A stretch of DNA of 63,657 nucleotides from Octopus bimaculoides (taxonomy: Eukaryota), in the NCBI RefSeq assembly GCF_001194135.2, contig NC_068984.1:52745416-52809072 (forward strand), written 5' to 3'. Position 1 is the first letter of the stretch, and every line of letters starts with the position of its first letter. The notes beneath the pieces were generated by a model. The model was not told where the DNA came from. It saw nothing but the letters and a program-made list of their open reading frames with translations, and made no database searches. Below, one piece after another: positions 45,801 to 60,800 of the stretch. Made by a program: the position numbers and the translations under genes.

Positions 45801-48800
45801 TAATCATCTATAGTTAGACATATTTGCATGTGTAGAAGTAGTCGCTTGATAAATGCAAAATGATGGCTATTATTTTATTAATGAGATAAATTACTAGGTA
45901 TAAAATTCTCTATACATGTATGTGTGTTCATATTGCTTGATTGATTAATAATAAAATACTAAGTTGAGTAATTGACAGAATCATATAGTCTTGTGATTTT
46001 GTAGATATGTTGTCCTAATATGTCAGACTCAAAAACATTTTGATAGCAGAGAGTTTAAGAAAGTTGGATGTTACTTATTAGGATGTCAGTGTATAAGTCT
46101 CATGAACTGGTAGATTTGTATGCACTTTGCAGAAGTGAGTCTGAATACCAGGAAAGTCTCATATTTTTATATTTAATATGCATGCACATACGTTCAGTTG
46201 TGTGTGTGTGTGTGTGAATTCATTTAGTTTATAATTACAGTTGAGAAGTTCAATGTTACAATTTGCCACTTTCCTGACATTGTTCCATAGATCCAGTATG
46301 TTTAGATTATTTAGATTAACCTATGCAGGGGATGAAAAATCAAACATCATAATGGAGTGCCATTGCAGTGTGGATGTATGTTGGCAATCTCTAGATCTAG
46401 TTAATTGTGATATTTAGCATGGAACAAAATTCAAGAATGCAATTGTGCCAGTGTACTCCTTGTTTTCTATGTTAGGCATTCTTTATTGAACATGACCTGG
46501 TCTGGTGGTGAATAATCTGTTTATTAGTACTTGAGATTAGTAACCTTGAATGAAAAGGAGTAGCATTTTCAACATGAAACTATACACTTGTACTTTCGGT
46601 TAAGTTATCTTTAGAAATTTTGTACTTAGATTAACAACTAAAATATTGCCAGTGGTTTATTTTCAAATGACCAACATAAAGAGTTTTTCTTGCCATGAGA
46701 ATGCTTTTTTGCATGCATGCAACACACTGATAAAAGCTTATATTGCAATGTATATCTGGATAATTTTAATCTCAATGTTTCTGAAATCTTTTTATTTCAA
46801 GAAACATTTTACAAAGATTGAACCTTATACACAAATGTTGCAATTTTTATATAATGACTTGGAGAAAGTATGTTACATAAAAGTATAATTGTTTTGTCAC
46901 CACTAAACTGAAAAAGGATTTTGATAACATTATCATCCATCATTATATTTTAACATTTACACTACTGGCATAGTTTAAAAAAGCAACATCTAATTATTAC
47001 TGTGTTCACTTAATATTATTCTAAGTCTTGTGCATGTGATTGTATGTTCTGCTTTTGCTGTGGTGGTGACTAGAGCTGTCCAAGTGTTGAGAAATCGCAG
47101 CTCCATGGACGATGACCGCATTTGTGATTTGGAGCAGAAATGCAAAGATGCAGAGCTGTTTGCTTCTGAAAGCCAGAAAAAATATGATGAGGTATGTTGT
47201 ACTGGCCACTTAGTTTGCATGCACTTGTTGACACCATTTTTTCCCCATACAGAGCCAAGAAAGCACTTGAAAACAGAGGTGCACATGATTATGACAGAAT
47301 CTGCTGTCTAGAAGATATCGCAAGAGAAAACACACAAACAGTTAATGATGCAGAACAGAAATACGAGGAGGTATGTTAACGCGAGACGTATTAAGCACGG
47401 TTAATTTAAACAGTACGAAAATGATTTAAAGATTCGGATGAAGAAGCAGACAGCTGTTTTGTGTATATATATCTCATTTTTTATTAATATTTTTATTTGT
47501 TTTTATTTCAGTGTCAAAGTCTTGTTGATTGTGAGATGGGGGTCACTTGATGGGTTTTTTTTTTTTTTTTTTTTTCTATTATTAATTGACATATTTCTTT
47601 CAGTGTATATTTTTTAAATGTCCATGAAGTTCATGTGCTGAAATTTGGCCTAGTACATTATTTAGATTTAACCTTTTGTTCTTCCACTGTCCGCTGGCAG
47701 AGCGCTCAAAGTACTTGAAAGCAGGAATCAAGTTGATGATGAAAGGATAGATCAACTTGAAGCTAATCTCAAAGAAGCTAAGTACATAGCTGAAGAAGGT
47801 GATCGCAAATATGATGAGGTGATTTTATGCACCAACTGTATGCATGCTTTATTCACTAAAGGTCTATTCACTGCAGTTGAACTTCATATTATCAACATAA
47901 TATAAATAATGAAGCCACATCCGTTTGTAACATAGTTAACCCAACTAATACTATCGCCTGCGCTTTAATTGTACCAATTTCTTAACTTATGAGCAATATC
48001 TGTTCTGCACCACTAGAGGGCGCAAAGTGTTGGAAAACAGGAGCCAAGGAGATGAAGAACGTATCGACTTACTGGAGAAGCAATTAGAGGAAGCCAAATG
48101 GATTGCTGAAGATGCTGATCGGAAATTTGATGAGGTGACAGCTTGGTGTTTGCTGTGCCAGTCTGATGAATTTGGCAAAGTGTTATGATGCTTTCGGAAA
48201 AAAAAATGAAATTTTTGACCCAAATTTGGGATTGCATTGTTTTTGAAGCCAAAAAGTTTGCTTGGCACTTTTAGAACTCAGATGAAATATGTTTACAGTT
48301 CCAATTTCCTCAAAAAAAAAAATAGAAAAGGAAATATTAGAAGAGAGACAATAGAAGAAAAGATTGTGATTAGCATTAGTTGTAGATGTTAATGCATGAA
48401 TTACAGATGTTTCAAAGGCATGTTAAATTACCTTGTTCATTGGTATTTAATTCAGGATAATGTGTAAAATGTAGGTAGATATATACAACTTAGTACAAAG
48501 TTATCTAACATAGCGTAACTTCAATACTAATTCTTAAGATTAGTTGGATAAGATTTTTTAGTACTAAACCCAGTTTTCTTACGACTTGATGTTTTCTTTT
48601 TGTGTGTATGTTTTTTGATAATTGAAATACATTTTGTTTATATTTTTATTTGTATTTTTTAAAGATTCCTTCAACTTGAATTTCATAACATTATTTTACT
48701 TTTTTTTTTTTTTTTTATCCAAATTAATTATCTATTTTAATTATAACCTTTTGGATATCTACTAATTTAGATATTTACATTTTACTATTTGAATCTTTTC

Positions 48801-57800: not shown

Positions 57801-60800
57801 AAACATTTTCTATCAATTTCTTTAGAAAACATTCTGTATTTTAATTTTAACTCAATATTAATTTTCATATCTTATTAAAATATTTCATTGATTGTCATTT
57901 CTCAAAATTAGTTCTTCAGCAAAAATAAAGTTCCTAGTGGATATACTGAAAAATTCTGTATTGGAAAATTTTCTTAGATTTGGTATTTTACCAATCTATT
58001 GCACCATCAAATAAGTTTTCAGAAGCTTATTTGGTATCTTTGCTATACCTATGATTAAATATTGCATAATTTAAAGTACTACGCTTCTAGCTTGTGTATT
58101 TCCTCATTCTAAACTTAAAAAGTTGTTGGAGGATGACATTTTGTGCCATATGAGCTTATATTTACTGGTTATCAGAAGAGGCACTATGTCTGAATGGAAT
58201 AGATTTTTGCCACTAATTTATGGCAGCTATTAAAATAGCACCACAAAGCAAGGAGCTTAATTTTATTTACCCCACTTCACATATAGAGAAAATCGGTAAG
58301 CTTGGTCAAGATAAACAATACACTACCCATCTTATCCACTAGATGTCTCATTTACTTAACACTTCAATAAATAAGCATTAAAATTTGTAATATGAAGCTA
58401 TGATAAATATTTTCTATGCATGTGTTCTTTTGAGTGGGTGGGGGTGATGAAACTATTTAAATGATTTTGCTTATTATTTTAAATATAAAATTTGATTGAG
58501 AAAAATATACTGGGTTATTTCATTTTGTAATCTCTTATTTTTTGAAGTGTAGGTAAAACATTTCTCTCTAGGTTCTGCTTGGAGAGTTGTTCTTGCTTTT
58601 TTTGTTTATTCATTCTACATGGTGTTTCACTGGCCTCCTGTCTTTGTCTAATGCTAGGCTGAGAACCGTGCCGCTGAGGCTGAAAGAACTGTTTCCAAGT
58701 TGCAGAAAGAGGTTGACAGACTGGAAGGTATTATCAAAGACTGTGTGTCTTTGCTTGTGTGTGTTTGGTTGTCCTTGTTGGTACAACAGAGCTGCTGTTG
58801 CTGTTTTAATTTAGGAAAATTTAGCAGCTCCTTTTCACAGATAGTCTTATAGCAGCAGACATTATTGTTGGATTCACTGCTAACTGCATGTATGAAGTTA
58901 TAAAGCATGGCTTTGGTTGTCTTATAGATGTGATTCTAATTAATTTATTAGGCTGAAAATCGTACAGAATGTGCTGAGCGCGAATGTAACCTGTTACATA
59001 AAGGCAAAGCTGTGTTAGAGGGTGAGTATTTGTGCCATAGAACCCGGACATAATTGATACCATTTTATTCCTTACTTTAAAAGAAATGAGGGATATTCAA
59101 TTTTGGGGGTTTTTTTTTTTTTTAATATAAAATATTTAATTAAATTTGCTAGGGTGGAGGTGAATATTCTACCTTTCTTATTCTTAATAATGCTTCCTAA
59201 AAATAGGAGATAAATGGTAATAAGAATTTAGACTTTTCTCAGCTTGCTCTTTATAAAATATTTAAAAGGGTATGTTTTTAAAATCTTACCAATTCCTATG
59301 AATTGGAGAAAAGATTTAAATATGCTACAAGTCAGACAGCTGATTACTTGCATAGAATTTGGCCTTAACTAGATTTTATTAGATTTATTGTAAATTTCAT
59401 GAATATTTGTTATATTTTATAGCTGGAAGTTGTATTGTTAATCGAAGAGAATTTTTGAATTGTAGTAAGAAAAGAGAAAAAATATGCATGAGTTGTGATA
59501 AATATTTCAGTTGATGTTAGGCATGTTTTGTTTTAGTTGTTGCCTTTTTTGACTTGTGAAGTTAATTTTTATAACATTCATTTTTGCACTAAAACAGTTG
59601 CTGACATTTTCTACAATATATTGAAATTTTTGAACAATGGTATCCATGCTATTTTAATTTTTATAATAATTTAGAAAATCTTTTAATATAAAATTGTTTC
59701 TGTTTTACCTGAAACTTTCATTAGACTTTGTTGGTATTTGTCAGCTTCGGTTTATTGCATTAATGACTTAATTGAATTTAGTTTGTTGATGCCTACTAAC
59801 ATCGACAAATGGCCTACTTTCTGGACAAATGTGACATGACTACTTACTAAATGGTCAGCATAGATCTTTTGTTTACATACTGGGTATAGGTTATCAGAAT
59901 ATAACAGTTGTGATATTTCCCTAAGAAATTTGTATAAGATTATGGTAGTATTCTTTAAGCTTCACCTAAGCTACCTACATATCGTATTTATACCAAGATT
60001 AAAACTGTGATGATAAATTCAAATAAACTGCATGAAACACTTTAGAAATATTATACAAAATTATTAAAGTACCTTATATATCTGTATCAAAGACTTAAAA
60101 TCACTCTTTTCTCCTTACAATTCTTAGTTGTGTTGAGAAATTATATTATAACTATTGCACAGCATAACAGTGGGACATCAGTAACATGGAAATTAATTAG
60201 AGTTGGAAGATGAGAGGTTGAAAACCTTTTTCTTTTGTCTGATATAACTATGTCTGTGTATTAAATTAAACTAAACTTCAGTTGAATTTGTTAAATTATG
60301 TCTTAATCTTTATTCCTAACTATGTAACATTATTCCAGGCAGCATTCAGATTAAGAACTTAAATGTCTTAACGAAAGATAATATTGCCCATATCCAATAA
60401 GCCACATGCATCAGTGATTTGTTGTATATGAATAATTGTTGGAGATAGAAAATTAGTATACATATAAATAATGTAAATATATGCTCTCGAGATAATGATC
60501 AGAAGTGTTGTCATCTTAATAACAATAACTCATCTCAGAAATACAGACACATAAATAACTAGCTACAAATGATAACAATTTAATCATTGCTTAGCAGAAA
60601 ATACTCTTTGATTAGTTTTAGATGCGTTTTTCATTCCTTACTAAAATTTTAAGCTAAATCTTAATGGGGTTGCGCTTATAATATCATTAAACTTTTAAAA
60701 CTGCTGGCTAAATGGTAAGTTGTCATGTAATATGCATGAATTGCTTTGTGTGATTCCTGACCCATTGGCATGTTCCAGGCGATTTGGAGAAAGAACAGCT

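What the first reader, a model, noticed from the sequence alone, without database searches (positions are those of the whole stretch)
47074..59021. Divergent exons insert cysteines at heptad 'a' core positions: possible disulfide-crosslinked or redox-sensitive tropomyosin
Seen: the canonical isoform has one Cys (C81, position d). Exons 4a, 4b, 6b and 8b each add two. In 284-aa numbering (a = n mod 7 = 1), C148 (4a), C204 and C211 (6b) and C246 (8b) are all at 'a', so 4 of 8 new Cys are at 'a' where 1 in 7 is expected by chance. The others are C142 (b, in both 4a and 4b), C143 (c) and C241 (c). Established: vertebrate Cys190 is an 'a' residue that forms an interchain disulfide in the parallel dimer. 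Inference: a 4a+6b+8b isoform could be stapled by up to four symmetric disulfides, as in oxidatively stabilised structures such as sperm or extracellular fibres.
Basis: partly seen in the sequence, partly recalled or inferred. Interest (0 to 1): 0.7.

Follow-up and report, generated by a model that had tools for sequence, protein, structure and literature searches.

The report
Cysteine-bearing alternative exons of octopus tropomyosin
The region holds the mutually exclusive alternative exons of the Octopus bimaculoides tropomyosin gene; four divergent exon copies do carry two cysteines each, half of them in the coiled-coil core, but the exons are already annotated and nothing here shows that the cysteines form disulfide staples.

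Summary
Window 47074-59021 spans the mutually exclusive exon arrays 4a-d, 5a-b, 6a-c, exon 7 and 8a-b of a tropomyosin gene. Its products match Octopus bimaculoides RefSeq isoforms exactly. Exons 4a, 4b, 6b and 8b each encode two Cys. C148, C204, C211 and C246 sit at heptad 'a'; C142, C143 and C241 sit at b/c. The 10-N gap lies in an intronic (TA)n/(CA)n microsatellite and touches no coding sequence.

All these exons are already in public isoform models for O. bimaculoides and O. vulgaris, including one 4a+6b+8b model. In every model I recovered, they follow non-muscle first exons (1b or 1c).

The 'a' enrichment is nominal: P=0.018 against a 1/7 null, but P about 0.1-0.16 against the positions Cys occupies in 140 other tropomyosins. 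All eight Cys are conserved in O. vulgaris, but that species differs by only about 3% in introns. The orthologous exons of Aplysia and Mytilus have Ile204 and Asn211 rather than Cys.

The proteins have no signal-peptide-like N-terminus. Vertebrate Cys190 is normally reduced.

Most likely these are ordinary lineage-specific core substitutions in non-muscle isoforms. Oxidative cross-linking is geometrically possible but unshown. No squid or cuttlefish data could be reached.

The parts
12731..12844 (+). Exon 1a, aa 1-38: start of the muscle-type high-molecular-weight isoform
   Evidence: ATG and GT donor read directly
13730..13855 (+). Exon 2, aa 39-80
18476..19045 (+). Alternative first exon 1c: 190-aa Lys/Ser-rich N-terminal extension that splices to exon 3
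   Evidence: 100% tblastn match to O. bimaculoides XP isoforms
35944..36066 (+). Alternative first exon 1b (41 aa): start of the low-molecular-weight 245-247 aa isoforms
42332..42465 (+). Constitutive exon 3, aa 81-125. Carries C81 (position d), the only Cys of the canonical isoform
47074..47191 (+). Exon 4a: [39 protein letters not shown]; C142 (b) and C148 (a)
   Evidence: Identical at DNA level in O. vulgaris
47253..47370 (+). Exon 4b: [39 protein letters not shown]; C142 (b) and C143 (c)
   Evidence: Three differences from O. vulgaris, all non-synonymous
47701..47818 (+). Exon 4c, no Cys
48017..48134 (+). Exon 4d, canonical, no Cys
49714..49784 (+). Exon 5a, canonical
49885..49955 (+). Exon 5b: [23 protein letters not shown], no Cys
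52712..52787 (+). Exon 6a: [25 protein letters not shown], no Cys
53234..53309 (+). Exon 6b: [25 protein letters not shown]; C204 (a) and C211 (a). Orthologue of the molluscan 'QNDQ-type' exon 6
53371..53446 (+). Exon 6c, canonical
54839..54848 (.). Assembly gap inside an intronic (TA)n/(TG)n microsatellite, between exon 6c and exon 7
56937..56999 (+). Constitutive exon 7, aa 214-234
58658..58727 (+). Exon 8a, canonical
58952..59021 (+). Exon 8b: [23 protein letters not shown]; C241 (c) and C246 (a). Also has K253 at an 'a' position and G252
60779..60867 (+). Alternative last coding exon 9b ([29 protein letters not shown] plus stop): non-muscle-type C-terminus
62256..62341 (+). Last coding exon 9a ([27 protein letters not shown] plus stop): muscle-type C-terminus

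Best explanation
Window 12.7-62.3 kb holds the tropomyosin gene of Octopus bimaculoides. It has three alternative first exons (1a+2, 1c, 1b), four tandem arrays of mutually exclusive exons (4a-d, 5a-b, 6a-c, 8a-b) and two alternative ends (9b, 9a). Each array's exon length (118, 71, 76 or 70 nt) is not a multiple of three, so only one copy per array keeps the reading frame.

The Cys-bearing copies 4a, 4b, 6b and 8b are the divergent members of these arrays. In every model recovered they appear in isoforms that start with the non-muscle first exons 1b or 1c.

The Cys are substitutions specific to the octopus lineage. At the core they replace L148, I/M204, N/E211 and V246, a position where an uncharged, smallish residue is tolerated. 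At the surface they fall at 142, 143 and 241.

Inference: these are intracellular proteins, so the thiols are mostly reduced. In that state they would mainly lower local core packing and tune flexibility and actin or partner binding of the non-muscle isoforms. In homodimers the four 'a' Cys could cross-link under oxidising conditions, as vertebrate Cys190 does, but there is no evidence that this is their selected function.
For: Shown:
- Exon map, splice sites, phases and lengths.
- Pfam Tropomyosin match of 183.5 bits for the all-divergent isoform and 60.4 bits for the 4a-5b-6b segment alone.
- Ungapped alignment to vertebrate Tpm1.
- 100% identity to O. bimaculoides XP_ isoforms.
- All 34 public octopus models examined contain at most one copy per array: 33 full-length models have exactly one, and the truncated P0136 ends after exon 5. 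Every model with a Cys exon starts with 1b or 1c.
- The O. vulgaris alternative forms come from PASA updates using Iso-Seq and RNA-seq (PMC10700109).
- 4a+6b+8b show 1 substitution in 264 nt against O. vulgaris where about 8.7 are expected at the intron rate, P=0.0016. These exons are therefore constrained.
- Mytilus also has four exon-4 variants and three exon-6 variants. Aplysia and Mytilus have the QNDQ-type exon 6. Aplysia and a bivalve-like sequence have 9b-type ends. The arrays are therefore old.
- The orthologous positions in those species are I204 and N211.
- Cys density over all non-canonical exons is 8 in 283 aa, which equals the 3.3% expected from base composition.
- No signal-peptide-like stretch in any N-terminus.
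- Cys190 is normally reduced in vivo (PMC6274839).
Against: - Four exons with exactly two Cys each (8 in 126 aa) is about twice the compositional expectation (P=0.055). It is far above other invertebrate tropomyosins, which have 0-1 Cys in residues 81-284.
- Three of the four exons place a Cys at 'a', and 6b places two on consecutive 'a' layers.
- All eight Cys are retained in O. vulgaris.
- These points leave room for a selected thiol function.
- The set of isoform models I saw was shaped by database clustering, so use of these exons with 1a+2 is not excluded.
- Reduced versus oxidised state in vivo was not tested.
Confidence: 0.7

Rival explanations
1. Isoforms combining 4a, 6b and 8b form homodimers that are stapled by up to four symmetric interchain disulfides at C148, C204, C211 and C246. 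This gives either a redox-switchable or an oxidatively stabilised tropomyosin, for example in sperm.
For: - 'a' register verified.
- A 4a+6b+8b model exists in O. vulgaris (P0128).
- All Cys conserved between two Octopus species, and the exons are constrained.
- Cys density is unusual for tropomyosins.
- Cys190 provides a precedent, including the disulfide seen in PDB 2B9C.
Against: - The 'a' enrichment is not significant against the empirical background.
- The Cys are absent from the orthologous exons of Aplysia and Mytilus.
- Half of the Cys are at b/c.
- 4b contributes no 'a' Cys and evolves at about the neutral rate with only non-synonymous changes.
- No signal-peptide-like N-terminus was found, so the proteins are inferred to be cytosolic.
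- The vertebrate cross-link is pathological, lowers actin affinity and destabilises the mid-region.
- The O. vulgaris transcript evidence came from developmental stages and adult bulk RNA, not specifically testis.
- The equivalent O. bimaculoides combination is not in the protein collection.
Confidence: 0.15
2. The Cys serve another thiol-based role: metal binding, S-acylation, S-nitrosylation or glutathionylation, or disulfides to partner proteins through the surface Cys C142, C143 and C241.
For: Three distinct Cys positions are solvent-exposed b/c sites, including the vicinal pair C142-C143 in 4b. All are conserved in O. vulgaris.
Against: No motif, partner or homologue supports this. Exon 4b, which holds the vicinal pair, shows 3 non-synonymous and 0 synonymous changes at about the neutral rate. 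Other molluscs have only sporadic single Cys at different positions: C135, C147 and C170.
Confidence: 0.07
3. Some of the divergent exons, 4b above all, are decaying duplicates that are spliced at low level and make little or no functional protein. Under this view their Cys are compositional noise in an AT-rich genome.
For: - 4b has 3 substitutions in 118 nt, equal to the intron rate, and all are non-synonymous.
- 8b has K253 and T239 at 'a' and G252, giving a weak core.
- Cys frequency over all non-canonical exons equals the random-codon expectation.
Against: - Open frames, correct lengths and phases, and consensus splice sites are kept in both species.
- 4a, 6b and 8b are far more conserved than introns (P=0.0016).
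- The exons are in transcript-based models of two species.
- 6b is orthologous to an old molluscan exon.
Confidence: 0.08

Closest known systems
Vertebrate TPM1-4 genes: alternative promoters 1a/1b, mutually exclusive exons 2a/2b and 6a/6b, alternative ends 9a-d
   Same: Identical coding exon lengths and phases, 114/126/134/118/71/76/63/70 nt. An internal first exon gives isoforms of about 247 aa. There is a non-muscle-type alternative C-terminal exon. The alignment to Tpm1 is ungapped, and D137 at position d is kept in all four exon-4 copies (PMC3384579 listed).
   Different: In the octopus gene the arrays sit at exons 4 (four copies), 5, 6 (three copies) and 8. Exons 4, 5 and 8 are constitutive in vertebrates (my own knowledge of TPM gene structure). 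Octopus also has a third first exon, 1c, with a 190-aa extension.
Vertebrate tropomyosin Cys190, and beta-Tpm Cys36 (the latter from my own knowledge)
   Same: A Cys at a core 'a' position of a parallel in-register dimer, able to form a symmetric interchain disulfide (PMC6274839).
   Different: Vertebrates have one or two such sites. An octopus 4a+6b+8b isoform would have four, none of them at 190 (exon 6b has R190). Cys190 is reduced in healthy muscle. Its cross-link is linked to heart failure, lowers actin affinity and causes a destabilising pre-transition. No oxidation data exist for octopus.
Tropomyosin isoform sets of other molluscs (Mytilus spp., Ostrea edulis, Aplysia californica RefSeq models)
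   Same: Four exon-4 variants and three exon-6 variants, including the QNDQ type orthologous to octopus 6b. A 5b-like exon, an alternative exon 8, a 9b-type end and a 1c-type long N-terminus.
   Different: Their alternative exons carry at most one Cys, and at other positions: Mytilus C135 (b), Aplysia C147 (g), Ostrea C170 (b). Positions 204 and 211 are Ile and Asn. The octopus copies are more divergent.
Public annotation of this very gene (O. bimaculoides LOC106871823, e.g. XP_014773975.1, XP_052823022.1; O. vulgaris CAI97216xx)
   Same: All exons discussed (4a, 4b, 5b, 6a, 6b, 8b, 9b, 1b, 1c) are already present in deposited isoform models.
   Different: No paper found by full-text search mentions these exons, their peptides or their Cys pattern.

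Membership tests
Tropomyosin (Pfam PF00261) | Profile match above the curated cut-off | tested here: met
   Isoform 1b-3-4a-5b-6b-7-8b-9b scores 183.5 bits against a cut-off of 38.6. The 4a-5b-6b segment alone scores 60.4 bits. The canonical isoform scores 285.4 bits.
Tropomyosin (Pfam PF00261) | Unbroken heptad register alignable without gaps to solved tropomyosins | tested here: met
   Ungapped phmmer alignment of query residues 34-238 to Tpm1 residues 74-277, E=4e-39. The a/d table shows hydrophobic cores in all exon copies, weakest in 5b and 8b.
Tropomyosin (Pfam PF00261) | Conserved gene architecture (exon lengths and phases of bilaterian TPM genes) | tested here: met
   Exon lengths 114/126/134/118/71/76/63/70 nt, all AG...GT flanked.
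Tropomyosin (Pfam PF00261) | Binds along actin filaments as a parallel dimer | not testable with these tools
   Needs biochemistry.
Mutually exclusive tandem exon arrays | Tandem homologous exons of identical length and phase | tested here: met
   Four exons of 118 nt, two of 71, three of 76 and two of 70, adjacent to each other and separated by introns of 61-446 nt.
Mutually exclusive tandem exon arrays | One and only one copy per transcript | tested here: met
   33 of 34 deposited octopus models have exactly one copy per array. The truncated P0136 has none for arrays 6 and 8. Exon lengths are not multiples of 3, so zero or two copies would shift the frame (read from the sequence). The models are partly assembled, so this is not single-molecule proof.
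Disulfide-crosslinkable tropomyosin (vertebrate Cys190 type) | Cys at a core 'a' position in the in-register parallel dimer | tested here: met
   C148, C204, C211 and C246 are at n mod 7 = 1, with the register anchored on vertebrate Tpm1.
Disulfide-crosslinkable tropomyosin (vertebrate Cys190 type) | The Cys is conserved across the lineage | tested here: inconclusive
   Conserved in O. vulgaris, but that species is only 2.9-4.1% diverged in introns. Absent from the orthologous exons of Aplysia and Mytilus. No squid, cuttlefish or nautilus data were reachable.
Disulfide-crosslinkable tropomyosin (vertebrate Cys190 type) | An interchain disulfide forms on oxidation | not testable with these tools
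   Needs recombinant protein or thiol-trapped tissue.
Oxidatively stabilised extracellular or sperm fibres | Secretion signal, or expression in sperm/testis | tested here: not met
   None of the three N-termini has a signal-peptide-like hydrophobic stretch; maximum Kyte-Doolittle 9-residue mean is 0.44-0.84. Tissue expression could not be tested.

The most novel reading that the evidence does not exclude
Octopus-lineage non-muscle tropomyosin isoforms (1b/1c start, exons 4a+6b+8b) carry four in-register core cysteines selected as a multi-site redox switch. Oxidation would zip the homodimer with up to four disulfides and change the stiffness and actin affinity of a specific actin-filament population.
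Probability: 0.1. Interest if true: 0.55.

Novelty: new member of a known kind. Interest (0 to 1): 0.25.

Why it matters
If the core cysteines were functional, octopus would offer a natural multi-site version of the Cys190 cross-link. In vertebrates that cross-link is known mainly as an oxidative lesion. Octopus would then be a tractable model for redox control of actin-filament coats by alternative splicing. As the evidence stands, the region is a well-behaved and already annotated example of the extensive exon duplication ('internal paralogy') typical of invertebrate tropomyosin genes. Its main practical value is a precise exon and isoform map and a set of testable peptides.

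Tried and rejected
1. Exact look-ups of contigs encoding O. vulgaris isoforms P0001, P0128, P0124, P0127 and P0133 found nothing. Only P0138 gave the O. vulgaris locus.
2. Exact look-up of ten plausible O. bimaculoides isoforms found none in the collection. These included the canonical 284-aa product and the 1a-, 1b- and 1c-initiated 4a+6b+8b forms. 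Use of the Cys exons with the muscle start could therefore not be tested.
3. Three homology searches, one exhaustive representative search and two metagenome scans returned no squid, cuttlefish or nautilus sequence with these exons. The 80 metatranscriptome loci are generic lophotrochozoan or arthropod tropomyosins, none cephalopod-like.
4. The first word-indexed search missed the O. bimaculoides isoforms that the second search found. Absence from such a search is therefore not evidence of absence.
5. Full-text searches for tryptic peptides of the Cys exons, and for cephalopod tropomyosin isoforms, gave nothing relevant. Irimia et al. 2010 (PMC2912468) is not held.
6. RNA folding of the fully conserved 6b-intron-6c stretch showed no unusual structure, z=0.01.
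7. Pfam found no domain in exon 1c or in the 195-aa minus-strand ORF at 5047-5634.
8. I rejected the idea that the N gap hides an exon or breaks the frame.
9. I rejected 'annotation artefact' for 4a, 6b and 8b because of their strong conservation relative to introns.

Full report
**What is in the sequence**

A tblastn probe with a mollusc tropomyosin sequence recalled from memory, used only to locate exons, lit up a plus-strand gene from 12.7 to 62.3 kb. I then read each candidate in three frames. I also scanned the whole window for AG...GT-flanked open segments with the exon lengths and phases of bilaterian TPM genes.

This gives the following map:
- Exon 1a 12731-12844, exon 2 13730-13855, exon 3 42332-42465.
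- Four 118-nt copies of exon 4: 4a 47074-47191, 4b 47253-47370, 4c 47701-47818, 4d 48017-48134.
- Two 71-nt copies of exon 5: 49714-49784 and 49885-49955.
- Three 76-nt copies of exon 6: 52712-52787, 53234-53309 and 53371-53446.
- Exon 7 56937-56999.
- Two 70-nt copies of exon 8: 58658-58727 and 58952-59021.
- Two alternative ends: 9b 60779-60867 and 9a 62256-62341.
- Two further first exons were found through database hits: 1b at 35944-36066 and 1c at 18476-19045.

The finding's coordinates run exactly from the first base of 4a to the last base of 8b.

**The gap**

The 10-N run at 54839-54848 sits inside a (TG)n/(TA)n microsatellite, between exon 6c and exon 7. In the gapless Octopus vulgaris assembly the same place is about 1 kb of TA/CA repeat. 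It has no tropomyosin-like exon. Deposited proteins join exon 6 to exon 7 in frame. The gap does not affect any coding claim.

**The observation**

The canonical product, 1a-2-3-4d-5a-6c-7-8a-9a, is 284 aa with a single Cys, C81 at position d. Exons 4a, 4b, 6b and 8b each encode two Cys, and I verified every codon.

The register a = n mod 7 = 1 is anchored by an ungapped alignment of the all-divergent isoform to vertebrate Tpm1. In that alignment vertebrate C190 falls on residue 190. On this register:
- C148, C204, C211 and C246 are at 'a'.
- C142 is at 'b' in both 4a and 4b.
- C143 and C241 are at 'c'.

**Is it more than chance?**

It is 0.010 if C142 of 4a and 4b is counted once. Neither figure is corrected for choosing 'a' after looking.

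I built an empirical background from 140 non-octopus tropomyosins whose register could be anchored at both ends. Of their 18 distinct Cys positions, 5 are at 'a'. With that rate, P rises to 0.10-0.16.

Cys density is the more unusual property. Other invertebrate tropomyosins have 0-1 Cys in residues 81-284, whereas these four exons have 8 in 126 aa. Even so, that is only about twice the 3.3% expected for random sense codons at this window's base composition (P=0.055). Over all non-canonical exons the count is 8 in 283 aa, which equals expectation.

**What it is**

The divergent exons are already public.
- O. bimaculoides RefSeq isoforms of LOC106871823 (e.g. XP_014773975.1, XP_052823022.1) match the window exactly. 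This includes exon 1c and the species-specific residues of 4b, so the window is O. bimaculoides.
- I decomposed 34 octopus models from O. bimaculoides and O. vulgaris. Exons 4a, 4b, 5b, 6a, 6b, 8b and 9b are all used.
- Each of the 33 full-length models has exactly one copy per array. The truncated P0136 ends after exon 5.
- Every model with a Cys exon starts with 1b or 1c, not with the muscle start 1a+2. Exon 1b gives 245-247 aa proteins, like the vertebrate internal-promoter low-molecular-weight isoforms. Exon 1c adds a 190-aa Lys/Ser-rich extension.
- One O. vulgaris model, P0128 / CAI9721606.1, is 1c-3-4a-5a-6b-7-8b-9b.

The O. vulgaris alternative forms were added by PASA from Iso-Seq and RNA-seq (PMC10700109). 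The exons are therefore transcribed, although long-range combinations are not single-molecule proof.

The all-divergent isoform is a clear tropomyosin: 183.5 bits on Pfam PF00261.

**Evolution**

I recovered the O. vulgaris locus as L001. Intron substitution divergence between the two species is only 2.9-4.1%. Differences in the Cys exons are:

| Exon | Differences | Type |
|---|---|---|
| 4a | 0 of 118 nt | none |
| 6b | 0 of 76 nt | none |
| 8b | 1 of 70 nt | synonymous |
| 4b | 3 of 118 nt | all non-synonymous (residue 147 Ile/Met, 151 Asn/Tyr, 163 Glu/Ala; O. bimaculoides/O. vulgaris) |

Together 4a+6b+8b show 1 change where 8.7 are expected (P=0.0016). These exons are under constraint, although the short introns inside the arrays are also unusually conserved. 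Exon 4b evolves at the intron rate. All eight Cys are kept in O. vulgaris, but at this divergence that is a weak test.

Outside cephalopods the arrays are old. Mytilus has four exon-4 variants and three exon-6 variants. Aplysia and Mytilus carry a 'QNDQ-type' exon 6 that is the best match to octopus 6b. Aplysia and a bivalve-like sequence have 9b-type ends. Aplysia and Mytilus also have 1c-type N-termini.

In those orthologous exons, positions 204 and 211 are Ile and Asn. An Aplysia exon resembling 4a has C147 (g) rather than C142 or C148. Other Cys in molluscan alternative exons are single and sit at b or g positions. The octopus Cys are therefore lineage-specific gains.

No squid, cuttlefish or nautilus sequence with these exons could be reached by any tool.

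**How it most likely works**

Shown:
- This is a tropomyosin gene with tandem mutually exclusive exon arrays.
- The Cys exons occur in isoforms with non-muscle starts.
- Four Cys occupy core 'a' layers, where they replace L148, I/M204, N/E211 and V246.

Inferred:
- None of the three N-termini has a signal-peptide-like hydrophobic stretch, so the proteins are cytosolic and the thiols mostly reduced. This is the case for vertebrate Cys190 in healthy muscle (PMC6274839).
- In the reduced state, a Cys in place of Leu, Ile or Val weakens local core packing. In 8b this adds to T239 and K253 at 'a' and G252. The result would be more flexible segments in non-muscle isoforms.

However, the vertebrate precedent is a pathological cross-link. 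It raises overall thermal stability, induces a destabilising pre-transition and lowers actin affinity. Also, half of the octopus Cys are at surface positions, and exon 4b contributes none at 'a'.

I put about 0.7 on 'ordinary core and surface substitutions in constrained non-muscle exons, thiols normally free'. I put about 0.15 on a selected disulfide or redox role.

**Comparison with known systems and novelty**

The gene architecture is that of bilaterian TPM genes, with the recurrent exon duplication described by Irimia et al. 2010 (cited in PMC8373072; the paper itself was not readable). The closest functional analogue of the proposed mechanism is vertebrate Cys190.

The exons and isoforms are already annotated. 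The Cys pattern itself does not appear in any paper I could search. I rate this as a new member of a known kind, of modest interest, with a cheap and decisive comparative test still open.

Noticed in passing
window 18476-19045: Alternative first exon 1c encodes a 190-aa Lys/Ser-rich, low-complexity N-terminal extension. It ends in a motif (…[25 protein letters not shown]) that recurs in Aplysia and Mytilus-like isoforms. Unnamed long representative sequences (P0155, P0157) end similarly. PDB hits include Drosophila 'SD21996p' chains (7BJG/7BJS/7BJN), but these aligned to query residues 40-123 (exon 3 onward) of an isoform that lacks exon 1c. Pfam finds no domain in 1c.
   Followed up: partly
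window 52788-53370, 47819-48016, 58728-58951: The short introns inside the exon arrays are far more conserved between O. bimaculoides and O. vulgaris than the flanking introns. Counts are 2/445 and 0/61 around 6b, 1/198 between 4c and 4d, and 2/224 between 8a and 8b, against 2.9-4.1% elsewhere. This may reflect splicing control. Folding 6b-intron-6c gave no unusual structure (z=0.01).
   Followed up: partly
window 47253-47370: Exon 4b differs from O. vulgaris at three sites (47319, 47329, 47366). All are non-synonymous and none synonymous, at about the intron rate. Every other alternative exon has 0-1 change. This suggests relaxed or diversifying selection on 4b.
   Followed up: partly
window 49954-49955 with 52712 / 53234 / 53371: Codon 188 is split across the exon 5/6 junction. 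After 5a (…GC|) it is always Ala. After 5b (…AG|) it is Arg with 6a or 6c and Ser with 6b, so the residue depends on the exon pairing.
   Followed up: yes
window 62339-63600: The sequence downstream of the 9a stop codon, presumably the 3' UTR, is 1.1% diverged from O. vulgaris. Neighbouring introns are 3.5-5% diverged, which suggests constraint on this stretch.
   Followed up: no
window 10988-11921: A 934-N gap lies about 800 bp upstream of the exon 1a start codon, so the promoter region of the muscle-type isoform is unresolved in this assembly. The long 'ORFs' listed there (10887-12132) are artefacts of the N run.
   Followed up: no
P0145 (marine metatranscriptome, ERR1712121): A mollusc-like tropomyosin fragment has a QNDQ-type exon 6 beginning KCYELDEQ…. 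This places a Cys at residue 190, the 'a' site of vertebrate Cys190, and looks like an independent gain at the same core layer. The source organism is unknown.
   Followed up: no
window 13856-42331: Intron 2 is about 28.5 kb and houses both alternative promoters/first exons, 1c and 1b. It also contains two N gaps (16908-16929 and 32465-32725).
   Followed up: no
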